Source: Glycera tridactyla (taxonomy: Eukaryota). Taken from it: DNA of 64,000 nucleotides. The position numbers and the translations under genes were made by a program. Shown here in pieces: positions 20,101-55,000 of this stretch. The DNA is taken from NCBI GenBank assembly GCA_965644265.1, contig OZ286459.1, forward strand, positions 116,684,001-116,748,000. The letters run 5' to 3'. The notes beneath the pieces were generated by a model. The model did no database searches, was not told the origin of the DNA, and saw nothing but the letters and a program-made list of their open reading frames with translations. The first letter of the stretch is position 1. Each line of letters opens with the position of its first letter.

Positions 20101-23100
20101 GTATAGCTGCATGAAAGCTGACACTCTAGCCTCAAGACAAGGCTTTTAAACAAAGAGCGGTACTCGAAACAAGGAAATGTATCAACTTCAGGAAATATTT
20201 TACCTACGTATTCAATAGCCGACTTGAGAGAAGACCGGCAGCGACATCTAAGGGCAGCGGATGCGTTGCTAATGAGACAAACAAATCGCCACACCATATT
20301 GATTTGTACTCACCGTCATTGAAATCCCATTGCAACTNNNNNNNNNNNNNNNNNNNNNNNNNNNNNNNNNNNNNNNNNNNNNNNNNNNNNNNNNNNNNNN
20401 NNNNNNNNNNNNNNNNNNNNNNNNNNNNNNNNNNNNNNNNNNNNNNNNNNNNNNNNNNNNNNNNNNNNNNNNNNNNNNNNNNNNNNACCCAGTCTTGCCG
20501 GCCTAGGCGAAGGACGTGCCACGAACTGTCAGTCACACTTCCTGGTGAACCTAGTCGCAGTCCTGGAAAACAGAACAATCACACTTCCTAGTAAACCCAG
20601 TCGCAGCCCTAGTAACTCAGAACTTGTGTATCTGGTAGCCGCTTTGTGCATGCTGACAATATCAGCTGAAGGTGAAGCGCTGTCAACTACCCATGTAGAC
20701 AGGACGCATGAGCTATACAAGTTGAGAATATAGGCGTTTTGGATTGCTTTGTCCCCCCCCCCCCCCCGTCGGGTTCCGGGCCGCCTTACCACCAATGGAT
20801 CAAATAAGGGTAATACACAATCTATTTTTTTCCTGTAGCTTCATTTTTCATGAGCTCAAGTGTATATCATTGTGAAGATGAATCATCAATATGCAGAGTA
20901 TGGAAGTAATCTTGGGAGTGAGACCAAGAAAATTTCTGGCTCGAACTATGCAATGTTTCCTCGATGTCTGCTGTCAGTAATCATATGCAGGGTGATAGTA
21001 GTCAGTCCAATCCTCCTCCTCCTCCTCCGCCTCCTCCTCCTCCTCCTCCTCCTCCTCCACACAGGTTACCTTCGATATTGGTATGTCGTCATTGCCTCAC
21101 ATCTGAGATCACTGGTCCAATAGTGATAGTGAAATCTGACAGTGACGTAAGATTGCCTTGATTGCATCACTCAAGCGAGGTATCACCCTCGTCGGCAGAA
21201 TTGGTATTATTGACACCGATTCTCGCCTCCCACACTAGAGAGGAGCGAGTGCGAAATGCCCGTATCCACCCCGGGATCATTCTGTATTTGAGCTGGCGGA
21301 GTAAAATGGTGAATAGTTAGCAGTGTTAATGCTGATGACCGATATGATGGCACTACAGTTGATCCTGGCTGTTCATCATGCTATTCATCATATATTATTC
21401 AGGCCTCGCCTAGCTAACTCTAATCTCACCTCGCTATTGTTTACAACCGCCAAGTGAACCGTGAGCCTGAGCCATACCGACAATCAGTGATCATCAACCC
21501 CTTTAAACCCACCTTGGTTTCTCTCTTATATCCACGGAAAACAGTACGTGTTAAGTTTTCTACCCATTTCAAGAGGCACTTGTGCGATTATCGTTGTATG
21601 TAGTGGTGATAAAAAGTGCTCAACATGGTTTGAGGTTTATTGTTTGTAATAGGTGGTGAAAGATGAAGATACTTGTAGGAATGTTGTTGCAGTCGTTAAG
21701 GCAGCAAAAGCAGGAGCAGCAGTAGAAGCATCAATTACAGAGGGTCAAGGGTGATGCTGCCATTGGTGATTCTGCTGGTACAGCAGCTGTTTCTTCTCTA
21801 TGTCCTGCTACCGCTCTTGCTGCTACGTAGAAAAAGCAGAAGAAGGGGAGAGGAAGAAGAAAAAGAAGCCGAAGAAGGAGAAGAAAGAGAAGGGGAGACG
21901 GAGGAGCAGCCAAAAAGGTTGAGGACAAAGAAGAATACAAACAAGATAATGACGATGACACCGAAGATGACAGCGAAGCAACGACAATAATAAGATAACA
22001 ACGATGATGGTGGTGGTGGTGATGGTGGTGGTGGTGGTGGTGGTGAAGTGGTAGGTACCGCCATGGCGACTTTAAGACAAAGCGGAATCCTCGTAGATCG
22101 TCAAGAGATCTCCAAGGTCAGCGAAACAATAATGGAAGAAGAAGATTGGAAGGGAGTTTGAGGCAAGTTATAAATCAGTCAACAAACAGCATGTGGCATC
22201 CTCATCATGGCTGATTGGTAACCAAGGGAAACTGGCTCGGGCCCATCTCGTCAATATATAAATTCAAGATGTGATGAGGTACCAAGGAAGAGGCACGCAA
22301 CCTATTTTTATCCGTCTTCATGTGAAGCCCATATTTGCCAGTTAGGATAGCAATCACAGTCTCTCCTGGGGTTATAGTTGATCACATCTATAGAATTGAC
22401 CTGATCTCAAGCGCCTGCCAGTGCAGAGCAAACTCCCATTAATGCAATGTTCCAAGCGTTTCTCTAAATGGAACTTTTCACCCATGTGATGGGAATGATT
22501 AAACTAAGTCAATATAGCCCAGATGATGCTGACGACCTACCTTTCTTCCTACCCTCCTACCTACCTACCTACCTAACCAACCAACCCACCCACCCACCCG
22601 CCCAATGACCCACCCACCTACCTACCTATACGTGCCTGTAGGCATGTTGGTGTTTTCGTGCATGATCAGCTATACATACACGCCCAATATATTGTAAGTT
22701 GTCTGTTTGCAGATTTCACCTTGGAGAAGAATCGCCTGATGTTGGAAGCTGTGCCGGAAGTACGCAAATATTGTCGTGCTCGGGGCTTGGAGTTCCAGGT
22801 ACGTAACCCGTCCGTCTGGCTTATTTTACCTTCAGTAAAGCCTCTTTCACACAGAACTGTCATTCGATGGCATTTGATGGCAATGATCGGCGGTTTTTCT
22901 GACTGGAAAACCGCCATCGAATGTCATTCATTTCAACTGTTCATTCTCAAAATGCTGCTGCACACGATCCACTTACATTCAACTATGGCAAAACTACAGG
23001 CTTGCTACAGTTCCACAACACTTGGCGACAACTCGGAAGTTCCAGGGAATTCGGCTGCACTCATTGGCATTTTCGCACACTTGGTCACAGTTGTCCTACA

Positions 23101-26100
23101 TTTATTGGCATTCACTGGCATTCATTGGCATTCGCTGGCATTCACTGGCATTTGTATACACTTCAGCACAATCAAGAGTAGTCGCCACAGATTGCCGTTC
23201 AATGTGGCCGAATGTGCGACGACCGTACTTGTAATTATATGGTAAAATCTGACACATGGATCACCAATATGTGCATAAAGTGTTACTTTGCTTACCCAGC
23301 AGGTGCTAGAATTCACGATAAGTTTGCAGCTATGTCCATGGAGACTAATTCCTTCATGCTCATGGCGCCCATATAATCCACATTTTATGACCATTCAGCG
23401 GATGAAAGCACAATTCGGCAATCACAGGTGACATTAATGGTACATCTGATACTAATCAATATCAGATACGGATGCTGATAGGATTATGATTTGCATGCTT
23501 TATTATAGACAACTCAAACTTGAAGGCACCCACTTATGTAGAATTTTCTGCCAAGTACATGGGCTATTATTTTGACACATGCTCGAGTGACCTCAGATAA
23601 TGGGGACAGTGAATAATCTGTGATGTAAGCCCAGATTTCAAGATGCTTCTTATATTGTGATATGACCCTGGTATTAGGTGTCACCCATAAGAATTATGAG
23701 AGCCACATCAATAACTTTTCGAGTGGGAGAATGGTGATAATTATCGGATAAATACTCCTCAGCCCGCCCTCCCCACAAGTGAGGATGATATAGTGGCAGC
23801 AAACATTGGTAGAGTCGATGGTTACCGTAATAGACCTCAACTTGAAACATTCACTCCCAGTACGATTCACACTGGAGTCTGAGATATGAGTGTCACATGA
23901 TTAACAGTCTCTGTGAATGGCTTGCTGGGTCATGACTTCGTGTGATACATTGTGGGCTTCTGGGCAATATACAAAGCCCCTATTGTCAACACAGCTCTCC
24001 GTGACCATAGATGGTATGTCTCCCAGGTGTTCGACAAGGACACTCTATAGCGCCCCGTTTGACTGATCTTGCTCATCCATAGGGAATGATCCGAGGAAGC
24101 AACCTCACCAACAGGCAGTTAGAACACCTAGCCTGAATTACAGGAGCCCTGGGTGTCAGGATTCACCTTGCTCCATTTCTGTTGGATGCCCGTTTGTACC
24201 ACATTCCGACCCGTTCTTCCATCAGTGTTGGCAGCTTTGTGTAGGTGGATGTTGGAGGATCACTTCCGCAAAGCATTATGTCCCTCGATGCCTGTTTCCT
24301 GCCTGCTAAATGTTCTCCTGATGTGCGAGCGGAGAATAGTCGAGAATTCATGATGAACCTGCCTCAATCAGACGCCCTCTAAGCATCATCTCCAAAATGT
24401 GACCTTTCCTGATCATGCCCAAGAACTCCAGGAACTCCACCGAATGACTGAACTTCCTGCTCTCGATGAAGTCAATTGTCAAGTCACTCAATCTTCATCT
24501 AATTAGGTCCTTCCTCTTTGGCTCCCAAATAAGGCCAATCCAACCTCGGTTGAAGAGATGTTAAGCCATACTTAATCAATCAATCAATACTATCTGAAAT
24601 TCCTGATTGAGTGGCTGAGACCACCGGTGTTGTCTGCAGTTTCTGCCTCTCCTATTGCCGAAACAACTATGTAAGCAGTAGCCACAGCTGCAGTAGTCTA
24701 GCATGCTTCTGGAATGGCCTTCTCGAAATGCTTTCCTGAATTCTTGGCATTAATGGCCGCTCTGCTTCTTGCATATCTTCCCCAGGACCTCCAAGTCTTT
24801 GTCTGTGGAAGTAGCTGACAGTTCAGACACGCCCCTACCTTATCACCATGGACATAATGGTCCTGTCGATGGCATACAACTATGTAACTGGTTGGAAGCT
24901 GACACTCGAGCCTGATAGCTGTGATTTCCTTTGAAGTAAAGCGCAACACTTGAAACACTAATATGCTAATATGCTTAGTTAACTGCAAAGAGCATAGATC
25001 CCGGGTCCCCTCAACTGTGTTCAGTACTTCAGTGGAGGAGAGCATCAATATGAAATTGAGGTGTCGGACTTAGAATTGGAGCGTGAGCACGATTTCACTT
25101 CAGACGTAAATTGTTTTGGGGAGTTTCCAGACTCAAGACTGGGTATCTTGTGGTGATGGCCAGGTCTCACTGCGAGCGGCGTCATTTGCTGTCAGAAAAA
25201 ATCGCGCTAAAACATCGTATATTTTATCATGCCCCCGTAAAATTTGGAATGACTGGCGGTAATTCGGCAGTTGACGGCGCTTGACGGACCGTGGCGGCGG
25301 CGATCAAACTAGGTGCGAGAGCGTTCCGAGGAAGTCAAATTTGACTTTTTAACAGTTAGAAAGTCAAAGTGGAGTCACTGTCAAATTTTATAAAAATGTG
25401 ATAGTCACTGTCAATTTTTGGCGGAGACAGCATCAGGCAGGGACTGAAGGCGTCGATGACGGCGTATGCCCCTTTCAAACTGGTGCTGTCACCTCCTGTC
25501 CCCAAAAAGAGGATGAGAAAATCATATGCGTCCGGCGCCGTAATTATCCTCGGCCAAATTTGACTTAGCGCCGTCGTGATGCGTATGTCGGCGCTTCCGG
25601 AGAAAGTGACAGCGCTCCCAGAGAAAGTGGACAGGGACTACGATGGAGTTGCGCCGACGTTTGATGATGGTCAGGCAGGCAGGCAGTCTGGAGGTGGCGG
25701 TGATAATGCCGGTGATGGTGATGGTGATGGTGGTGGTGACAGTGACGGTGGTGTTGTTGATGGTGATGTAGGTGATGGAGGTGGTGGAGATGGTGGTGAT
25801 GATGGTGGTGGTGATGGTGGTGGTATTGTTGATGGTGAAGGTGGTGGTGGTGTAGATGATGGTGGTGGTGGTGGTGGTGGTGATGGTGGCAGTGGTGCTA
25901 GTCATCTTCCCACCTAACAATTCATCCAACCACCCAGTGCATGCCGACTGGGATATCAAAGGCCGGCCGCGTATTTAGGAGCCTTTTCCTTTACGCACGT
26001 TAAAGATTCACTGCTGTCTTTCGCAAAGAGTAGGGACGGCCCCCGGCATGCAGTGACTCTTTTTCTTCAGTATTTTCAGTTTTTCAGTCCGATATAACCC

Positions 26101-43000: not shown

Positions 43001-46000
43001 TGCATATCTACGGACAACGTGCAATCGCGCGGCGAATGCAAAATCCAAATTTTGTATCAGAATATGGAATGTCGCACCTCATCAATGGAGTGACATTCTC
43101 ATATGGAATGTCTGTTTCATTGAAGTTCTTTGTCCTGAAAAGGGGTGGATGAAATGAAGACACGCAATATAAAGGCTGGCTTGCCTCGTAACAGTGGCAC
43201 TGCTGAGGATCATTCTGTGACGTGACTACATTGCCTCCTCGACAGACAGTTGAAGTCATGCCAAGATAGAAGACATTAATCTTGCAAACTCGCTCACGAG
43301 CACTCACTGCTTTGGATCCAGTGATGGACTGGTGCACGGGATAAGGCCATGAGCTATCCTCAATCTGTGTATGACTGCCTCCGTGTCTGTGTGTGTGTGT
43401 GTGTGTGTTGGGGGGGGTATGTATGTGTACATGTGTGTGCACATGCGTGTGCGGGATTTGTGTCCCTGCTGCCTTTGCCATCTACCTATTTTTCCCTTGA
43501 TCAATTCTTCCATTCATCGATTCATCGATCTGTCTGTCAGTCTACCTGCCTGTATGTCTGTCTGCCTGCCTGTGCTTCAAGCTCAGCTCCCCGAGAAACC
43601 CTCTGAGAATTCACTCCATTGCAGACGCCACGTTGGGGTGAAATTGTACCATATTTTAATCAGAATTGTGTTATCCACTATATTGTTTTCTTTACGGATT
43701 TACTGATGATTGATAATGATGGTAGATGTAATGGAATGAGAATACTTCCATCTCTTAAATCGAGCCCCTTGCCAATTTATCCATGCGAATATAAAAAATT
43801 GAGTTGTTTATATATAGATATATTGAATCAGCCCATCAATCTCTTACTCATCCTATAGCAATGGTTTTCCTAACGTGTTACACTCTGTTTTGTACTCGGT
43901 ACTCGGGTACAATGTTTTAGCAGTGTTTTGAGGTAGTATGCTGTTACTAGCCTTATAACAATGGCTTTTCTAATATGTAATAGTTTGCTTTGTACTTCCG
44001 TCTTCGAAGTTAGCCACTCTCCCGAATCCAAGGGAGAGTGAATTGGGGTTCGGGGTTGTGAAAAGACCAAACTCACTCTCCCGTTGGAAGAGTGCGGATG
44101 TTCCAGTTGATGAGAAGGTGATGAATTTACTATCGAGATAGAATACCACAAGTTCGACTCCACAAATCAAATGTGATGAATGTACTATGAAGACAGAATA
44201 CCACAAGTTCGTCTCCACAAATCCAAAATAGATAAACTACAAATACACGACTGAATAACTGATATTGATTGTATTGTCTGTTTGATACAGAGAAGTACTT
44301 GGATCTGGATGGGACGAATTGGGATGAGGAAGCACGTGGGCTTCTCACTCAGCTGAAGCAGAGGGTGGCTGAGAGTTTGTCAGAGTCGAATCTAAGGACG
44401 TATAACCTGCAATGGTTGCCCCCTGGATTGTCACAGATCGACAACGAACATCAGGAATACATGGAAAGATTCATCGCCGACTTTATTGACCAGATGAAGC
44501 GACTGGTTGATTCCAATATCGCCGCCAAAAATGAAGTGCAGAATTTCATGCCCTTCACACAAGAGGTGCTTAGGCACTCGTGGCAGACCCAGGTGGGTGG
44601 ACGTAACATCAGTGTCGTCTGATACAACGATCCTGAGTGACCTAGCTTAGGAAGATGGTTGGCTAGGTTTGGTTGGGTTTGGTTTGGTTGAGATCCAACG
44701 GCAGCTTATCAGCATCTATTCGCTCGCCAAAAAATGTTGAAATCTCTTCAAATTTTTGTCAGCATATCTGTAGATTCAGACGCCAGTGGTAAGAAGAAGG
44801 CTGTCTAAAAGACAGGCGTCCTGAAAAAGAATATATTCTGGCAAAACATGTGTATTATTAGTAATGGACAGCTACAGAATTGGTCCAGTACAGACTTGGC
44901 ACCAAGTGTTTGTTACTATAATTTATTTTCTGTGAGGATATCACAATGAATATGGATGTTAAATAAACGAGTTTGATTTTTTCGAGTTATTATTCAAATA
45001 ACATTCCGTGAGCATCCGTAGATAAGTTCACCAGGTGGTGAGGATTTTCTCGGGCTCTTGAATTCCCCTTATACCCTTTGTATGGGCACTATAATGCACT
45101 CAAACCTGTCTATAGAAGCCACATTCGGTCGCCTCAAGAAGTAACCTTCATAGAGAGATCATATACTATTACAGCTCAGAATGACCTCCATAGGCTGGTG
45201 GCCTCTTTAGAGAGACGGTCTGTCAAGCTGATCCGACTGTGTGTTACAATATTTGCGTGACAGAATCNNNNNNNNNNNNNNNNNNNNNNNNNNNNNNNNN
45301 NNNNNNNNNNNNNNNNNNNNNNNNNNNNNNNNNNNNNNNNNNNNNNNNNNNNNNNNNNNNNNNNNNNNNNNNNNNNNNNNNNNNNNNNNNNNNNNNNNNN
45401 NNNNNNNNNNNNNNNNNNNNNNNNNNNNNNNNNNNNNNNNNNACGCCTCCAATGTGTTGTACGAGCGAAAGGTGGCAGTGGCCGACATCCGAGCGCAGTT
45501 GTTCCGTACGTGGAACGCCGATCACAGCGAACGTAAACCGGAACCCGGCGAGATCGACAGCGATTCCACCGAAACAGAATACTCCGAAGAAGAATTCGAA
45601 GTATTCGAGAATGTAGACGAACCTCTACCGGGAGGTGATGGAGGGGCGGGTGATGGCAACAAAGATGAGGAGGCAGAGACGACCGCCAAAGATGAGGATG
45701 ATGGTGGGAAAGATACGAACCAGAATGATGAACAGAAACCCGAGCAAAACGAGGACGAAACAGCCCCCGCCGAAGAAGCAGACAGCGAAGAGAAGAAGAA
45801 ACACGATGTTGAATCGTCAACGGATGTTGAGAATGGAAACGGGGATGAGAAGAAAGATGGAGAAGATAAAGAGGGGGAAGACGCAAATACCGATGATGCA
45901 GAGAAGGAAGAGAAATCAGAAGTGACAGAGAAAGTTGATACTGCCGAGAAAGATATAGACGGTGGGGAAGAGGCAGATGTTGAAGACAACGATGAAGTCG

Positions 46001-49000
46001 ACGAAAAAGACAAAGATGGGAGCGGAGATAATGATGAGAATAATCCGAAGGAGGATTTAGATGGAGATGCTGGAATTGAGATGCAAGCTAATGACCTTCT
46101 GGAGAAATTGGAAGCGTGGAAAAAGAGTAAACTGGAGGAGGATAAGGTGGAGCCCGAAGTGTTGAGTGTAGCAGAGTCAAGTGATGATGATGAGGGCATT
46201 CTTTTCATATCAAAAGGACTGATGGATCAGGATGTAGACAACAAGTACCCAGATCACGTACTGATTGCAGCAGTTGCCCCGCAAAAAGATGAGGTCTCGG
46301 CAAGTGAGGCTCTCTATGCTGAACTACAATTCCACGCTCTCAAACGCTACTCTAAACCTATGATTCTGTGCGGGCCTACAGCATGTGGCAAAACCACATT
46401 GATGGCATCAATCGCTATGGACATTGACAATTGGCTGGAGCATAAACCTGTAAAAATCATCCGATTTCTGGGCACCACTAAACATACACTCAATATTAGT
46501 GATATCATAATTGGAATTTGTGCACAAATCTGGCTGGCTTATGATGTGTGGATGCCTATAGACCTCCAAGTTGGTAAAGATTTCACGAAATTGTCAATCT
46601 ACTTCCGAAATCTCCTGCAGAAGATCAAAACAAAGACGCGCCCTCTTGTGATTATGCTAGACGCCATCGAGAAGCTCGATGATAAAGATGGCGCTCTCGC
46701 CCTGACGTGGCTTCCGAAGCAGCTCCCCCGAAATATTCACATGATCATCTCCATGCGTGACGAACAATGTCTGACGAATGCACAGAACTACATGGACGAC
46801 TACGATCGCTTCGTACAACTCAACCACGACCTCATTGACAAGGTCATCGTACAGGTCATCGAGCGATGGCGACATAAAACCAAGAAACAACTCACTGGCC
46901 ATCAGGTAGGATCAAGTCTTTTTCATTTTAACAGATAACACTGAAGGGGACCTGTATCATTTGGTCAATTCACATTTCGTCATGAATTGGCATTTTCTCC
47001 ATTACATGGTCGATGTATTGTACGGCACATGATTTCAACGATGTTATTACGCTATTGGTCACAGAGACATTCCTTTCATATATTATGTGTTCCTGCTTTG
47101 TATATATGTTATTGCACTATTGGTCAGAGAGACATCCCTTTAATATATCACATGTTCCTGCTTTGTATATATGTTATTGCACTATTGGTCACAGAGACAT
47201 CCCTTCAATATATCACATGTCCCTGCTTTGTATATATATTATTTCGTGAATTAATTTTGTTTCTACTCAAACTGGGGTAACGGTACGTAGACAGGTGGTC
47301 TACAGGTGGTCTATATCGAGTACATAGTATAGGATGATGGTATTGCTGACATCTCTCATTGTATGAAATTGTTATTTGGACCGTCTCAATACGTGTCTGT
47401 ACCATATTTTGGCGATAACTTATGGGTGATGTAATTCATGATGGGATGGAAATGCGATGTCGTATCTCCTCTCAAACATTATAAAGCATTTATGGAGCCT
47501 TATGAAGTTTTATGGAGCCCTAATGGCGACTTATGAAGTCTTTTTGAAGCCGTTATGAAGCCTCAAGTCTCTCATCTTTGACGTCAACAGGTGAATTTCT
47601 TGGTGACGCGAATAAAGAACGAGAAGCAGTTGCTGTTAATGAGGATGGGTTTGGAGTTGGCCATGATCTGGACATCCTACACCCCCAAGAGCGAGATGTT
47701 CTTATGTGCCAGCCTCTCAGATACCTGCGAGAGGCTCTTCAATGACCTTGAGAAGAGTTTTGGAAAGCCCGTCATGAATAAAGTCNNNNNNNNNNNNNNN
47801 NNNNNNNNNNNNNNNNNNNNNNNNNNNNNNNNNNNNNNNNNNNNNNNNNNNNNNNNNNNNNNNNNNNNNNNNNNNNNNNNNNNNNNNNNNNNNNNNNNNN
47901 NNNNNNNNNNNNNNNNNNNNNNNNNNNNNNNNNNNNNNNNNNNNNNTTTGCGATCATCACCAACATCGTAGTCGTCACCAGTAACACCAGTGCTCCACAC
48001 AGCCACAGGCACCACTTGTATTATCAATATTACCACCACAACCACCACTACAACCACCACCACTACTACCCCATCATCATAACCAGCACTACTACCACCA
48101 CCACCAATTCATCACCATTTCCACCAACGCAAGTGGGTGGCAAGTAAATCAGTCTGTAAACTCCTCCGCGGACCACCACGCTTGGAGGTGGGTCAGGGAA
48201 AGGCTTACTGAGAAACTGATTCGCTGCCTGACGAATTGGCTGACTGGCTGGGTGGCAGTCTGGCCAACGACGAGTGTTATGATCTCGATTTAATTGTTGG
48301 TGATGTTGTTAATGTCACTTTATTGTTTTGTTGTTGATGCTGATAATNNNNNNNNNNNNNNNNNNNNNNNNNNNNNNNNNNNNNNNNNNNNNNNNNNNNN
48401 NNNNNNNNNNNNNNNNNNNNNNNNNNNNNNNNNNNNNNNNNNNNNNNNNNNNNNNNNNNNNNNNNNNNNNNNNNNNNNNNNNNNNNNNNNNNNCAGGCTA
48501 CTTGACCGTGTCTCGGTACGGCCTCACCCCACTGGAAATGGAGGACTTACTAAGTTGTGACGAGGACATTCTACAAGATGCCTTCATCTACCACTCACCA
48601 CACAGTGAGCAATTGCTCCGCATTCCCCAACTCTTCTGGAGACGTCTACACAACGAACTGAAGCTCTACATTTCTCTCACTCGTCGCAATGCTCGCACTC
48701 TCATGGTCTGGTTCCACTCGGAGTTCGCCGGCTACGTCCACGAGAAGTACCTGACCCCACAGTCCGTCGAGCGCGAATTTCATCACGCACTCGCCGACTA
48801 TTTTCTAGGCAAATTGGTAGATCGTAAACATGGTACAATCGAACTTGGAAAGCCGCGCAAGAAATACGACATAAATAACAGAAATGTAGGTTCTTCGATG
48901 ATATCAACCCCGCCATTCCCACTTCCTTTCAGGTCCCTTTCCAAACTGGAGACACCAATGATGTAGGACATTGGTATCATNNNNNNNNNNNNNNNNNNNN

Positions 49001-52000
49001 NNNNNNNNNNNNNNNNNNNNNNNNNNNNNNNNNNNNNNNNNNNNNNNNNNNNNNNNNNNNNNNNNNNNNNNNNNNNNNNNNNNNNNNNNNNNNNNNNNNN
49101 NNNNNNNNNNNNNNNNNNNNNNNNNNNNNNNNNNNNNNNNNNNNNNNNNNNNNNNNNNNNNNNNNNNNNNNNNNNNNNNNNNNNNNNNNNNNNNNNNNNN
49201 NNNNNNNNNNNNNNNNNNNNNNNNNNNNNNNNNNNNNNNNNNNNNNNNNNGGGAAGTGTGATGGAATATCACTGCAAGCATGAGGCTGGTATGAAGTTGG
49301 TAGTTCATGACTGAACTCATCTCATATATATTCCTCATCATGCATTTCATTATTACAGGTACCATGCTTTGTCAGAATAATTGCACTGCTATCATGTGTG
49401 TCAGCTTTCAGCCAGTCACATTGTCAAATATGCTATTAATAGATTCTTTCAGGATAATTTGAGGGATGTGGTTTGTATCCGAACTGTCAGCTCATCCGAC
49501 TAGATGAATGTTCTGGTTCCCTGTCATCTTGTGTTCCCTGTTTGAGACAGTGATGCCTGCAGAGGAAAGAGCACCTAACTTTCGTATACCATTCCTTTAA
49601 TCATGTCCACTATTCTGATCTCTTCCAATATATAATGAACTATTTCTGGTGTGACTTTGTTCAGATTGATCCTTCATATTATCAAGATTGTTATATTCTT
49701 ATATGCTGAAAATGCAATATGTACTCGACAGTCAGTTGACGAGAGTGGCTCACAGATATTCTCCGAACCTTATGCTTGTCCATTTTTCAAGTGGTGCGTT
49801 TTGCTCAAAAAGAAAGCATTGCTAGCAGGCTTGAGTGTCAGCTCCCAACTAGATACTTGATTAGACCATTGGGTTCATGTTGAATAGATAGAGGTGTGTC
49901 TGAACTGTCAGCTATCTCCACTTGACGACCGTTCAGGCTCTGCATCATCTTGCGTTCAGGCTTAGTGTTGCCTGCAGGGGACAGAACATCTAGCTTTCAT
50001 TGACCAGGAACACATGACATACATAATCCTGTGGGATGATACATGCTGGTAAACCTGAGACATACAAACACATATATCACTGATCTCCAATCACTGTAGA
50101 ATCTCTGTTACTTTGCAGCTACTGACACAGCCCTTATTATTCAGTGGAATGAAGCAGTCGATTTACAACATGCGTTATATGACCGAACTGCCCTACCATC
50201 TTGTCCTCAGCTTCCGCTATACTGACTTCATCGACACTCTCTGTCGAAGATATGAATGGCTCTATCACAAATGTCAGGTAAGTCAAAGTCAAACAAACTT
50301 TATTTATACTCGTAAGACTCACCTTTCCCTTGCGATTCCCTTGTATATATTCTGTCGTTTTCGTTTGTATGTTTAGTCGATGTCTATGGGTTTGTCGGGA
50401 CTATTCTCGATAACATTTCCAAAATTCAAATTCATTACTTATTACTCAGTTTAAACATGTATATTGGAGTATGTAAACTCATATTTATGACACGAATGCT
50501 TATCCTTGTGTTGCAATTATTGGTCAGACAGGGGATATGCAGATCCACACTACCCCTACAGCAGATAATTTTTTGAAGCCTTTGAAGCCATTCCCCTACC
50601 TCGTGGTGTCAAAAAATTCCACAAGTCTGAAGTGCAACCAAATTCTACTCGACTATATCAAAACTTTACATACCGAATTCTACATCCAGTCGGGAATGAG
50701 AACTACAATGTTATTGCAAACGACGCAAAGGCAGCCTCACAATATTGAACATGGACGAGGGGTGTCACTGCTATTCTGGGTCTACATTCCCCTTTTCCTA
50801 GTCGCATTAGATCAGGAGAGATGATAAGATAGGCTGATAGCAAAATATATATATAACGGTAATAATTTCCATGATCAATTACAGCTGAATAGTGGTCTTG
50901 TATGTTGCCTTTATTAATGTATGTCTTGCTGTTAAGTCGCTTGTAGTATCAAGATAAAATGCTGTCTTTCATCGATTGTCCAAGATAGTAGAACATATCG
51001 AGAGATAAATCACACGATACTGTTCTCCTATATTTGTATTCGGAACACTTTCAATATTTCGAGCATTTTGAGTAGGTGGACTCGATGAGGTCGGTGTTGG
51101 ATGATCTACAGTTCGCCCTGAAACACGTACCAGCTGCTATATCCGAACTACAGAATGACGAGAATGACAAAGGTGCGCAGTTGAACGGTCAGGCTGAGGA
51201 GATCAAGGCTCTACACGACGTCCTCGCTCTCCGATTTGACGTCGTGCAACACAACCCTCGCTCACTCTCCACTCAGGTCGGTAACTATTTTAGTAGGGCT
51301 GCGACTAGGTTTACTAGGTTGTGTGATGGCATTGCACTGCAAGCATTGGGCACCCATTATTGTGGAGCTGGTTCGAAGTTGACAGTTCGTTATTCTCCAA
51401 ACCTAATGCTTTTCCTCGTTTCAAGCACTGCGCTTTGCAAAAAAAGCATAGCTATCAGGCTGGAGGGTCAACTTCCAGCCAGTTTCATAGTTAGATATGC
51501 CATCGTCAGGTTCATTATGTTCATGTTGTGTAGTCAGATGTGTGTCTGAACTGTCAGCTGCTCCCACTCGACAACTATTCAGATTACTATCATCTTGTGA
51601 TCAGGGTTTGTGAGAGTGATGTCTGCAGGGGAGAGAACATCTAGCTCTTATTGACCAAGAAAACACGACAAACATACTCTTCTAGGTTGATACATGTCGT
51701 TAAACCTCAAACAAACAAACAAAATCGGTAACTATTATTCATTTGCCAGATGATATTTGCCAGATGATTGATGGGGGAATTCAATCATAATGTATGGACT
51801 AGAGATGGGCATACCCTATCATAAAGATGGATTTGTTTGTTTGGGAGCATAGTGCTGAAGATATACAAGCCATGATATTGATTTCTCAGTAAATCTGTAC
51901 TTGTCATAGTTAAAGCATGTTAGGTGTACAATGCAATTTCTGCACTCCCATCAATCACATATGACGGTCGTGATGACTTGTCGAGTTGAATGTATCATAT

Positions 52001-55000
52001 TGATTGCTGAAAGTACTCAGAATCATATCTCGAAATCAGCGAGATAGGAACAGGAAGTGAGTCAGCTCACCACAAGCGCCACCTTGCGTCAATACACTAA
52101 AATACAGTGGTGTCAAAATCAATGAGATTATCATGGTGGAGATAGGGACAGGAAGTGGAAACCAGCTCACTGCAAGCGCCACCGTCTGCCAATACACTGA
52201 AATACACTGGTGAACATTTTTGGAACTAAAACCTGTCAACCACTATAGACATTGAGAGCAATTGCTTGATTTCCGCCACTTATTCCCACCACCAGACCAC
52301 TACGGCGGCCGGCGAGTTGGTACATACGGGTACTAGAATGGAAGAAGTGATGAGCAAGCATGAAGCCCCGACACTGATAACAACATCTAGATGGATGCAT
52401 ACAGTTTGCTTAACTTTGCCTCATTCTTTTCCAAATATCTCAATTGTAAATCGACGAATCTGCACAATTATTTCACGAAGATGTTGCGAACAAATTGGAT
52501 GAAAAAAGGACTGTGAAATAATGTACGCATCCAACAAATATAGAACTTCCGGCGATCATCTGACCCGGTTTCAAGAACGTGGACAGCAAGGCGCACATTG
52601 GAGAATTTTCTCGATCGGCCATCCCAAACACCTGCATTTCCACACATGTGGAAAATGAATCGAATGTTCGAACTGACGATGTTCCACCTCAAAACTGACA
52701 CCCTGTCATATTGGACACGCGTTTAGACAGTTTTGCCTACCAGAACATGAGGATTGTGCTAGGTTACTTAGTGGTGCGGCATAGCACTAGTAGTTTTGTA
52801 TTCATACAGCCGGTGAGAGCAATATTTCCACTCAGTGGAAGGATGCTCCAGAACTGTCCAGACACCATCCGTGGTAAAACAGTGATAATGGGAAAAGATT
52901 GAATGGATCAGTTTCTACTTGATGATCCTGTCATGTGATCTTACAATGCTCCAATCATGTAAAAATGAGGCGACTATTTAGTGTGAACAATAGCACTATT
53001 TGAAATATCTTCGTTGTTCAGTAATCACCACCGAAAACGAGATGATCAGAAGATTGAATTGCTTTAATTTGTTCAATTTCCTTGATGATACGCGTGAGAA
53101 TATGAAACTCCGAGTGGCGAAGATCATTCTGTAATTTCTTTCTCAACGTATCATTTATTCTGAGGATGTGGTTCTGTAGGCCAATCATCAGAGGAGATGA
53201 TATTGTGGTCGAACCAGCTCTGTATTTTTGTGTTTCACAGTTGCTGGGTCAAGTGATGGGTCGGGCCGATCTGCCAACAGGATTAGCACTGCTACGCAAG
53301 CAAGCGGAGATCTGGTGTGAAAGTATAGAACTACCACTTATTGTGCCAAAATCACAATGTCTGCCATATCCTGGAACGTCGCTGAAGAAAGTGATCGACG
53401 TGAACATGGTCAAGCCGATGGGTGAGCTTTTTTGTCGTTTCTTGCATGTTTGTTGGCATGTTTGAATGCAGAAAGGAGCATTAATGCTATTGGTATTCCT
53501 GAGGGNNNNNNNNNNNNNNNNNNNNNNNNNNNNNNNNNNNNNNNNNNNNNNNNNNNNNNNNNNNNNNNNNNNNNNNNNNNNNNNNNNNNNNNNNNNNNNN
53601 NNNNNNNNNNNNNNNNNNNNNNNNNNNNNNNNNNNNNNNNNNNNNNNNNNNNNNNNNNNNNNNNNNNNNNNNNNNNNNNNNNNNNNNNNNNNNNNNNNNN
53701 NNNNNNNNNNNNNNNNNNNNNNNNNNNNNNNNNNNNNNNNNNNNNNNNNNNNNNNNNNNNNNNNNNNNNNNNNNNNNNNNNNNNNNNNNNNNNNNNNNNN
53801 NNNNNNNNNNNNNNNNNNNNNNNNNNNNNNNNNNNNNNNNNNNNNNNNNNNNNNNNNNNNNNNNNNNNNNNNNNNNNNNNNNNNNNNNNNNNNNNNNNNN
53901 NNNNNNNNNNNNNNNNNNNNNNNNNNNNNNNNNNNNNNNNNNNNNNNNNNNNNNNNNNNNNNNNNNNNNNNNNNNNNNNNNNNNNNNNNNNNNNNNNNNN
54001 NNNNNNNNNNNNNNNNNNNNNNNNNNNNNNNNNNNNNNNNNNNNNNNNNNNNNNNNNNNNNNNNNNNNNNNNNNNNNNNNNNNNNNNNNNNNNNNNNNNN
54101 NNNNNNNNNNNNNNNNNNNNNNNNNGGGGCGCGTATGTGTACATGTTGAGTTGTTTGTTCTCTTTCTTTTTGGATCGCTTTAGATGCTTGCGATTTTAGA
54201 TGCTTCTGACATCCCAACATCGCACCATAGAATGATTGACCCCTACCAACCTTGCGGAGATTAATCTGATCTGATTTTGAATATACAATGCTACTGTATC
54301 ATCATGTTCGTTATTACAAATATATTAGTCAGTCATTGAAATTGCTAGCCATTCAAAGATGCAGCCAACTTACCTGTCAACCAACCCATAAAGCAATGAA
54401 TCAATCAACCAAACAGTCACTCGCTCCAACAATTGACCAGTCACTCTTTAAAATCGACCAGCCAGCCAGTTTAACTCTTTCTACCCCATACATGCACCTC
54501 AACACAAATCAATGAGTCCAGTCCATCCATCGGGGAGAACTCATTGATTTGGAACAAACACACGTGTGTATGTTTTGTGTTCAGCACTGCTCAATGCGAC
54601 TTTATTTCTTAATTCAACCTCACTTTCATGGCGCGCGTACAGCGTTTTATAATTTTGTCATGAGCTTTCTACTAACCCAGGTCTTGAAATAAGGAAATCC
54701 TTGCCGAAGTCGCATGGCTCTCCGAATGTGCAGCCATTCACAGGTAACAACACCCATCCCAGGATGAGCTGAGATTGTCATCTTTGTTCGGTGTCATTTA
54801 TGGATATTATGACGTCACAATCAGGAAAACTTTCAGACGTTCATGGACCAATTGCGACAATCGGGCAGGTTGTCATGCAATGTTGCAGTGAGGATAGAGG
54901 GCACCCATGCCGAAGATTCACCAATGCTGTTGACATTGTGACTCATTGGGTTGCGTGTTCTCCTATTTTCTTGCACCGTCCTTGAGCACCTAAACACTCA

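What the first reader, a model, noticed from the sequence alone, without database searches (positions are those of the whole stretch)
45514..46353. ~280-aa acidic, low-complexity insert directly before the NACHT Walker A
In NWD-family proteins the F/Y.GR...L..I..YL helix is followed within a few residues by P...G..G.GKT. Here YERKVAVADIRAQLFRTW is separated from PMILCGPTACGKT by 840 nt of open, D/E/K-rich coding sequence inside one exon, with no stops and no perfect tandem DNA repeat. That suggests a maintained disordered module (possibly a nucleic-acid mimic, Ca2+ or cation sink, protease-cleavable switch or condensate linker) at the nucleotide-binding domain of a STAND ATPase. The functional ideas are inference.
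Basis: partly seen in the sequence, partly recalled or inferred. Interest (0 to 1): 0.7.

Follow-up and report, generated by a model that had tools for sequence, protein, structure and literature searches.

The report
Acidic disordered loop inside NWD1-like NACHT
A real, coding-looking stretch of about 190 acidic, disordered residues lies inside the nucleotide-binding domain of an NWD1-like ATPase gene, but it is an overgrown version of an insertion that a whole clade of mollusc, annelid, nemertean and flatworm homologues carry at the same spot, so it is a modest variant and not a unique module.

Summary
Window 45514-46353 is 280 codons of open, D/E-rich sequence (36% D+E, net charge -71). It lies in one exon of an NWD1-like STAND gene, between the F.GR-type helix (here YERK...) and Walker A (GPTACGKT).

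It is not unique. Among 102 relatives, 72 have the classic spacing of 11-40 residues (all but one 11-22). Thirty, including the window's nearest kin, have 77-385. On a tree built from the NACHT core alone, 29 of these 30 form one clade (SH-aLRT 95). Named members are bivalves, gastropods, annelids, a nemertean and a flatworm. All 28 linkers measured are net negative.

Only about 186 residues (45514-46071) are low-complexity and predicted disordered. The last ~95 are a helix, a loop and a pre-Walker helix shared with the clade.

The frame is open beyond chance (0 of 5000 shuffles) and strongly 3-periodic. The disordered part has no plausible internal acceptor. No RNA data were available.

The few polymorphisms give pN/pS of about 1, so composition is kept but sequence is not.

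Best reading: a translated acidic loop-out between helix alpha-0 and strand beta-1 of the NBD, enlarged in this lineage, acting by charge and bulk if it acts at all. The scan had no earlier finding on it.

The parts
22694..33292 (+). 5' exons of the same gene (about 22694-22801, 32307-32471, 32978-33292). They match the DUF4062 (TIR-like) N-terminal region of full-length homologues.
   Evidence: tblastn of P0013, P0015, P0064 and P0155 against the window. Pfam places DUF4062 at residues 31-117 of P0155. The short window pieces alone give no Pfam hit.
44291..44592 (+). Upstream exon, ending ...EVLRHSWQTQ followed by a GT donor (phase 0). It holds the conserved EVLHH motif that precedes the F.GR helix.
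   Evidence: Sequence; tblastn to P0002, P0064 and P0155; alignment A1.
45443..46905 (+). Exon carrying the finding. The visible part starts right after the masked stretch 45268-45442, which holds the true acceptor (not read). The donor is CAG|GTAGGA at 46905/46906.
   Evidence: The next exon starts at 47591 after ...tcaacag.
45448..45513 (+). Pre-insert helix (exon residues 2-23). It is the counterpart of the family's F.GR...L..I helix, here YERK....I, and is taken as helix alpha-0 of the NBD.
   Evidence: It aligns with F.GR of 35 homologues. AF2 predicts a helix at residues 2-19 with pLDDT 79-91. Structural alignments to Cdc6, Apaf-1 and Avs3 start at model residues 1-4.
45514..46071 (+). 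Acidic low-complexity core of the insert (exon residues 24-209), predicted intrinsically disordered.
   Evidence: Composition. AF2 pLDDT 43-56 with no secondary structure. No alignable counterpart in relatives apart from composition. Open frame and 3-periodicity.
46072..46140 (+). Amphipathic helix (residues 210-232). It corresponds to a confidently predicted helix that precedes the conserved loop in clade members.
   Evidence: AF2 on the window: helix 210-232, pLDDT 65-75. AF2 on P0013: helix 77-99, pLDDT about 90. Alignment A1.
46141..46293 (+). Loop module (residues 233-283). It contains GILFISKGLMDQDVD, the counterpart of the clade motif MGV.F..GD...D.ESDP, plus an extra ~25 residues shared only with P0002.
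   Evidence: Alignment A1 columns 400-460. Low pLDDT of 32-45.
46294..46371 (+). Pre-Walker helix and strand beta-1 (residues 284-309). This is where detectable sequence homology to all top hits begins.
   Evidence: phmmer matches begin at query residues 67-95, which are exon residues 276-304. AF2 predicts helix 284-293 and strands 301-310.
46372..46395 (+). Walker A, GPTACGKT. It departs from the family consensus G.SGSGKT at two nearly invariant positions (S to T, G to A).
   Evidence: Sequence; conservation list of A1.
46396..46905 (+). Rest of the NACHT core in this exon. The Walker B aspartate (LDAIEKL) is at 46660-46662.
   Evidence: Pfam NACHT 28.0 bits against a cutoff of 26.7. D406 is invariant in A1. 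AF2 pLDDT above 90. Z 12-14 to Avs3, Cdc6, Apaf-1 and plant NLRs.
47591..58723 (+). Downstream exons of the same gene: 47591-47785 running into a mask, 48496-48966 (HTH_NWD1), about 50158-50283, about 53238-53408 and about 58526-58723. The gene probably continues past the window.
   Evidence: tblastn; Pfam HTH_NWD1 E 2.6e-8; acceptor at 47590/47591.

Best explanation
The segment is translated sequence of an NWD1-like STAND ATPase (DUF4062/TIR-like N-terminus, NACHT, NWD1 winged helix). It sits at a clade-specific insertion site between the F.GR helix (alpha-0 of the nucleotide-binding domain) and strand beta-1/Walker A. In a spiralian clade of these proteins the site carries a short acidic disordered linker, a helix and a conserved loop. 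In the window's lineage the acidic linker has grown to about 186 residues (224 by the alignment's borders, net -65). Because alpha-0 and beta-1 belong to one fold, the insert is a loop-out whose two ends stay close together. It therefore places a large, highly negative, flexible cloud on the NBD next to the nucleotide pocket; it is not a tether that sets the distance between domains. What is shown: position, composition, predicted disorder, clade distribution, and retention of negative charge without retention of sequence. What is inferred: the loop works through charge and bulk, as an electrostatic and steric 'bristle' that keeps the protein soluble and disfavours premature NACHT-NACHT assembly, which in this architecture is thought to switch on the N-terminal TIR-like domain. 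Growth by slippage or duplication of GAN/AAR-rich codons is also inferred.
For: Gene identity: Pfam NACHT and HTH_NWD1; ordered tblastn hits to full-length DUF4062-NACHT-HTH_NWD1-WD40 homologues. Bimodal spacing from the F.GR helix to Walker A: 11-40 residues in 72 proteins (all but one 11-22), and 77-385 in 30 including the window (P0002 read by eye). On a NACHT-core-only tree, 29 of 30 insert-bearers form one clade (SH-aLRT 95) and the window is sister to P0002, the other longest insert (94). Named members are molluscs, annelids, a nemertean and a flatworm; Owenia has both types. All 28 linkers are net negative, 33-308 residues long. AF2: window residues 30-209 have pLDDT 43-56 and no secondary structure, with flanks confident; the same layout appears in P0013. 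Alignments to Cdc6, Apaf-1 and Avs3 run from model residues 1-4 to about 462 (Z 12.7-13.8), consistent with the pre-insert helix lying in the alpha-0 position. Coding status: 0 of 5000 shuffles open and strong 3-periodicity; no pyrimidine-tract acceptor inside the disordered part; P0002's 385-residue insert is one uninterrupted genomic ORF; independent contigs at 96-97% identity show 11 substitutions and no indel. pN/pS about 1.0 with net charge kept. DUF4062 as a TIR-like NADase sitting in the CARD-equivalent position: bioRxiv 10.64898/2026.05.01.722283.
Against: There is no RNA or protein evidence for this organism: no listed sequencing run is on record as RNA, and only three short contigs matched. 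pN/pS of about 1 from 11 differences is equally what a functionless passenger would show. Model coordinates could not be inspected, so the packing of alpha-0 on the NBD rests on alignment ranges and on general knowledge of AAA+/STAND folds. The 28-of-28 negative linkers are phylogenetically related, not independent. The bristle/anti-oligomerisation mechanism is inference only. Walker A deviates at two near-invariant positions, so the ATPase itself may be atypical.
Confidence: 0.6

Rival explanations
1. Neutral passenger. The site is a permissive surface loop and the acidic low-complexity run is a slippage-driven expansion that is merely tolerated, with no selected role for its length or charge.
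For: pN/pS of about 1.0 in the disordered part. No conserved motif between the window's and P0002's inserts. Length varies about tenfold among relatives. P0002 shows overt internal peptide repeats. Weak cryptic DNA repeats occur in the window.
Against: All 28 linkers in the clade are net negative and none is basic or neutral. The frame has been kept open over 558-840 nt, which no shuffle achieves. The polymorphisms seen conserve net charge.
Confidence: 0.25
2. A specific regulatory module: a phospho-switch (acidophilic kinase sites), a cation sink, a protease-cleavable segment, a nucleic-acid mimic or a condensate driver at the NBD.
For: High charge density (NCPR about -0.29) and 7 S/T-x-x-D/E sites in the window's linker (27 in P0002). 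The location is next to the nucleotide pocket.
Against: No conserved short motif across the clade. Residue-level evolution looks unconstrained. No Pfam family matches other than P-loop domains. None of these activities was or could be tested here.
Confidence: 0.1
3. Not part of the mature protein: the low-complexity part is removed as an intron inside the exon (exitron), or the reading is an assembly or annotation artefact.
For: No RNA data were obtainable. The exon's 5' border is masked.
Against: Within 45514-46071 no AG has an upstream pyrimidine tract above 56%, and there is no GTRAG donor-like site there. The frame is open and 3-periodic. The same stretch is present in independent contigs without indels. 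Homologous inserts are open in the genomic ORF of P0002 and are included in database protein models of several species.
Confidence: 0.05

Closest known systems
Classic NWD1 / NWD1-like proteins (for example the Ptychodera flava, Acanthaster planci and Corticium candelabrum models named 'NACHT domain- and WD repeat-containing protein 1-like')
   Same: The EVLHH...F.GR helix, the NACHT core, the NWD1 winged helix, the DUF4062 N-terminus and the overall gene architecture are shared.
   Different: In these proteins Walker A follows the F.GR helix after 11-22 residues. The window has about 285 residues there.
Insert-bearing spiralian NWD1-like clade: P0002 (unnamed ENA genome assembly), Paralvinella palmiformis KAK2166420.1, Ylistrum balloti XP_060069536.1, Owenia fusiformis CAH1783942.1, Mytilus, Haliotis, Batillaria, Tubulanus, Macrostomum
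   Same: Same insertion site and same order of parts: acidic linker, helix, loop, pre-Walker helix. They group with the window on the NACHT tree. P0002 and Paralvinella also have very long acidic linkers.
   Different: Most members have a linker of only 33-77 residues. The window's is 224 residues with the second-highest charge density. Identity to any member is at most 43% in the NACHT core. The window and P0002 share an extra ~25-residue piece in the loop.
Hsp90 charged linker (from general knowledge, not tested here)
   Same: It is a D/E/K-rich, length-variable, poorly conserved disordered segment attached to an ATPase domain, thought to act through flexibility and charge rather than sequence.
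   Different: It connects two separate domains (N-terminal and middle) rather than looping out within one fold. The protein family is unrelated.
CIITA (NLRA) acidic domain, and the NLRP3 polybasic linker plus FISNA (from general knowledge, not tested here)
   Same: These are charged or disordered regions immediately N-terminal to a NACHT domain that tune the behaviour of an NLR-type STAND protein.
   Different: They lie before the NBD fold, not between alpha-0 and beta-1. CIITA's acidic domain is a transcriptional activation domain, and NLRP3's linker is basic and binds lipid. No sequence relationship was seen in Pfam.

Membership tests
NWD1-like STAND ATPases | NACHT-type P-loop NTPase domain with Walker A and Walker B | tested here: met
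   Pfam NACHT scores 28.0 bits against a cutoff of 26.7. GK[ST] and the invariant Walker B aspartate are present. Structural Z is 12-14 to Avs3, Apaf-1, Cdc6 and plant NLRs. Walker A departs from consensus at two near-invariant positions.
NWD1-like STAND ATPases | NWD1-type winged helix after the NACHT | tested here: met
   Pfam HTH_NWD1 scores 34.2 bits against a cutoff of 27 in exon 48496-48966.
NWD1-like STAND ATPases | N-terminal DUF4062 (TIR-like) domain | tested here: inconclusive
   Exons at 22694-33292 align with residues 34-207 of P0155 and with the same region of P0013, P0015 and P0064 (E down to 3.6e-16), where Pfam places DUF4062. The short window pieces alone give no Pfam hit.
NWD1-like STAND ATPases | C-terminal WD40 propellers | tested here: inconclusive
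   tblastn matches stop at about residue 1307 of P0155, at window position 58723. The WD40 part of homologues lies further on and probably falls beyond the window or in masked stretches.
NWD1-like STAND ATPases, classic layout | F.GR helix followed by Walker A within about 11-22 residues | tested here: not met
   The spacing is about 285 residues in the window, against 11-40 (all but one 11-22) in 72 classic members.
   The smallest starred set holding the window is 29 insert-bearers (SH-aLRT 95). The window is sister to P0002 (94) (quick search only).
   Alignment A1, linker charges, and AF2 of the window and of P0013. The loop motif is degenerate in the window (GILFISKGLMDQDVD).
CIITA-type acidic activation domain | Sequence homology to the CIITA N-terminal acidic domain and a position at the protein's N-terminus | not tested
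   This is an analogy only. The window's segment is internal to the NBD, and Pfam shows only P-loop families for the exon.

The most novel reading that the evidence does not exclude
The acidic loop-out is a tunable intramolecular gate. It is anchored at both ends beside the adenine pocket and the protomer interface of the NACHT domain. Its negative cloud would set the threshold for nucleotide exchange and ring assembly, and so for firing of the N-terminal TIR-like NADase. Spiralian lineages would then adjust that threshold by lengthening or shortening the loop. This would be the first intradomain disordered 'rheostat' described in a NACHT NBD.
Probability: 0.12. Interest if true: 0.6.

Novelty: new variant of a known kind. 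Interest (0 to 1): 0.3.

Why it matters
NWD1-type proteins are poorly understood STAND ATPases. Their N-terminal DUF4062 was recently reported to be a TIR-like NADase fold (bioRxiv 10.64898/2026.05.01.722283). A clade across Spiralia in which the nucleotide-binding domain itself carries an always-acidic, length-variable disordered loop has not been described in the literature I could search. It offers a natural length series of 33 to about 300 residues for asking whether charge and bulk next to the P-loop tune STAND activation. For annotation, it warns that the F.GR helix and Walker A of these genes can lie hundreds of codons apart within one exon. The window's copy on its own is an extreme member of that series, not a new kind of element.

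Tried and rejected
- **Word-index protein search.** The search with the exon (region 210-487) found nothing within the allowed length range. The exhaustive search was needed.
- **RNA evidence.** No run on record as RNA holds the stretch. Two small runs of uncertain kind gave three contigs of 170-252 nt inside the acidic part. These show the DNA exists elsewhere without indels but say nothing on splicing. Reads were laid only on the N-free stretch 45443-47785.
- **Pfam on short exons.** Single short exons of the gene gave no hits.
- **Fold searches.** Foldseek and VIA searches returned only generic AAA+/STAND matches and nothing for the insert. Model coordinates are not exposed, so helix-to-core contacts could not be measured.
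- **Earlier findings of the scan.** Nothing was recorded at this place. Two notes on other pieces of the genome (NLR-like LRR fields, decayed NACHT genes) did not bear on this gene.
- **Literature.** Searches on NWD1 plus invertebrate or spiralian terms found no description of the insert.
- **Rejected: tandem DNA repeat or microsatellite origin.** Only weak arrays were found, and third codon positions are diverse.
- **Rejected: the Ser-rich ORF on the minus strand (45522-46208) as a gene.** It is the mirror image of a GA-rich coding strand.
- **Rejected: an alternative in-frame acceptor at 45466/45467.** It would shorten the EVLRH-to-R spacing far below that of every homologue.
- **Masked stretch.** 45268-45442 was not filled or looked up.
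Full report
**Observation**

Window 45443-46905 (+) is one open exon. Its translation starts ASNVLYERKVAVADIRAQLFRTW. It then runs through 280 codons (45514-46353) containing 54 E, 46 D, 27 K and 2 R (36% acidic, net -71) to KPMILCGPTACGKT. Tandem Repeats Finder reports only three weak short arrays.

The open frame is more than chance given the T-poor composition:
- None of 5000 dinucleotide-preserving shuffles of the 840 nt, or of the 558-nt low-complexity part, stays open in that frame.
- The other five frames have 3-32 stops.
- Base composition is strongly 3-periodic (G 62% at position 1, A 62% at position 2, mixed at position 3).

**The gene**

Pfam finds NACHT in this exon and the NWD1 winged helix in exon 48496-48966. 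Full-length homologues with the architecture DUF4062, NACHT, HTH_NWD1, WD40 align in order along the + strand from about 22.7 kb to 58.7 kb. That series includes an exon at 44291-44592 ending EVLRHSWQTQ|gt and the next exon, which starts at 47591. This is one large NWD1-like gene with several exons partly masked.

A 2026 preprint (bioRxiv 10.64898/2026.05.01.722283) reports that DUF4062 is a TIR-like NADase fold. In NWD1, NWD2 and TEP1 it occupies the position that CARD has in Apaf-1. The authors speculate that NACHT oligomerisation activates it; in their hands human NWD1 itself was not active.

**Relatives**

The word-index search found nothing in its length range. The exhaustive search with window 46072-46905 found 2357 relatives, the best at 40% identity. 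Detectable homology starts about 27 residues before Walker A.

Reading the sequences upstream of Walker A, and measuring the distance from a profile of the EVLHH...F.GR helix to Walker A, gives a bimodal picture:
- 72 proteins have 11-40 residues, all but one of them 11-22.
- 30 proteins have 77-385 residues. These include the window (about 285) and P0002 (about 385, read by eye). All of the window's closest hits fall in this group.

Alignment A1 puts the window's YE-RK on the family's F.GR and shows the extra material as one insertion at one site.

**Phylogeny and range**

A tree was built from the NACHT core only, so the insert's own columns play no part. It places 29 of the 30 insert-bearers in one clade (SH-aLRT 95). 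The thirtieth (Owenia P0064) is unresolved next to that clade. The window is sister to P0002 (SH-aLRT 94) (quick search, midpoint root).

Named members of the clade:
- Bivalves: Ylistrum, Sinanodonta, Mya, Mytilus.
- Gastropods: Batillaria, Haliotis.
- Annelids: Paralvinella, Owenia.
- A nemertean: Tubulanus.
- A flatworm: Macrostomum.

Classic-spacing proteins come from a hemichordate, a sea star and a sponge. One also comes from Owenia, so both types coexist in at least one spiralian.

**Anatomy of the insert**

AF2 on the window's exon with A1 predicts:

| Exon residues | Prediction | pLDDT |
|---|---|---|
| 2-19 | helix | 79-91 |
| 30-209 | no secondary structure | 43-56 |
| 210-232 | helix | 65-75 |
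| 234-283 | low-confidence stretch | 32-45 |
| 284-293 | helix | 64-82 |
| from about 300 | NACHT core | above 90 |

A typical clade member, P0013:347-673, has the same order on a smaller scale: two confident N-terminal helices, a 35-residue low-confidence acidic linker, a confident 23-residue helix, a 20-residue loop (the MGV.F..GD...D.ESDP motif), then the NACHT core.

So only 45514-46071 is the low-complexity, disordered part.

Structural alignments of both models to Cdc6/Orc1, Apaf-1, CED-4, Avs3 and plant NLRs (Z 12-14) run from model residues 1-4 to the end of the core. This fits general knowledge that an (L/F).GRE-type helix is helix alpha-0 of this ATPase fold. I therefore read the insert as a loop-out between alpha-0 and beta-1, with both ends held together next to the nucleotide pocket. 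It is not a tether between separate domains.

**Is it in the protein?**

No RNA evidence was obtainable. No listed holder is on record as RNA, and the two small runs gave only three contigs of 170-252 nt inside the acidic part.

Indirect evidence favours translation:
- The frame and periodicity statistics above.
- No AG within 45514-46071 has an upstream pyrimidine tract above 56%, and there is no GTRAG donor-like site there.
- P0002's even longer insert lies in a single 815-codon ORF in genomic DNA.
- The contigs, at 96-97% identity, differ by 11 substitutions and no indel.
- Database protein models of several species include their inserts.

**Mode of evolution**

The 11 differences are 9 nonsynonymous and 2 synonymous, giving pN/pS of about 1.0. 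This is a very small sample. Together they change net charge by only -1.

Across the clade the linker is unalignable, and by the alignment's borders its length ranges from 33 to 308 residues. Even so, all 28 linkers measured are net negative (net charge per residue -0.03 to -0.40). The window's is 224 residues with net -65. P0002 shows overt peptide repeats. Long linkers occur in the window+P0002 pair, in Paralvinella and in P0029, so expansion has happened more than once or has been repeatedly trimmed. Composition is kept; sequence is not.

**Mechanism**

Shown: a disordered, strongly acidic, length-variable loop at a fixed site in the NBD of a clade of NWD1-like proteins, hypertrophied in this lineage.

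Inferred: it acts through charge and bulk. The most economical role is an electrostatic and steric bristle on the NBD face that keeps the protein soluble and raises the barrier to NACHT-NACHT assembly, and so to activation of the N-terminal TIR-like domain. I give the whole reading 0.6.

Rivals:
- A purely neutral, tolerated expansion (0.25). It predicts the same pN/pS but not the uniformly negative charge.
- A sequence-specific module such as a phospho-switch, cation sink, cleavage site or mimic (0.1). There is no conserved motif to support it.
- Removal from the mRNA, or an artefact (0.05).

**Comparison with known systems**

The gene meets the tested membership features of the NWD1-like family (NACHT and the NWD1 winged helix; the DUF4062 and WD40 rows were inconclusive). 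It fails the classic close spacing of the F.GR helix and Walker A. It meets both features of the insert-bearing spiralian clade delimited here.

From general knowledge, the nearest functional analogues are the Hsp90 charged linker, the CIITA acidic domain, and the NLRP3 polybasic linker with FISNA. None is homologous, and all lie between domains rather than inside the NBD fold.

Literature searches found no description of this insertion. The scan had no earlier finding at this place.

**Verdict**

This is a real feature with a sound observation, but the uniqueness claim does not hold. It is an extreme member of an undescribed clade-wide variant of a known protein kind. Acidic disordered expansions are common in eukaryotic proteins, so interest is modest. 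The clade-level pattern (fixed site inside the NBD, always acidic, tenfold length range) is the part worth following up.

Noticed in passing
window 46372-46395: Walker A reads GPTACGKT. The family consensus is G.SGSGKT, and the S and the following G are at least 90% conserved in the alignment. The sister protein P0002 also deviates (GEPGDGKT). This may point to altered nucleotide handling in this sub-lineage.
   Followed up: partly
window 44593-45442: An intron splits the EVLRH motif from the F.GR-type helix here. In P0002 and several other spiralian genomic ORFs the stretch from RF.D through the insert to the NACHT core is a single uninterrupted ORF. The intron therefore looks lineage-specific. 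Its acceptor lies in the masked stretch.
   Followed up: partly
window 45268-45442, 47786-47946, 48348-48493, 48981-49250, 53506-54125 and others: Thirteen N runs of 131-620 nt are scattered through the window, and several cut into exons of this gene. They were left unread, so exon borders next to them are approximate.
   Followed up: no
window 45522-46208 (- strand): There is a 228-codon Ser-rich ORF on the opposite strand of the acidic segment. It is the expected mirror image of GA-rich codons and not evidence of a gene.
   Followed up: yes
L001 10001-12448 (protein P0002): The 385-residue insert of the nearest relative contains overt tandem peptide repeats (units like ETKDERRISKE). This shows duplication-driven growth of the linker in that lineage.
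   Followed up: partly
alignment A1 columns about 428-460; window 46210-46290: The window and P0002 share an additional piece of about 25 residues (…PQKDEVSASEAL… / …PRRDEVTLSQAL…) between the clade's GD..D loop and the pre-Walker helix. It is absent from all other members.
   Followed up: partly
window 43330-43480, 56600-56660, 58090-58170, 62740-62790: Long (CA)n/(TG)n microsatellites lie in introns and flanks, visible as THTHTH or CVCVCV runs in the translations.
   Followed up: no
Owenia fusiformis proteins P0064 and P0066: One annelid genome encodes both an insert-bearing and a classic-spacing NWD1-like protein. The insert clade is therefore a paralogous lineage and not simply the spiralian orthologue.
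   Followed up: partly
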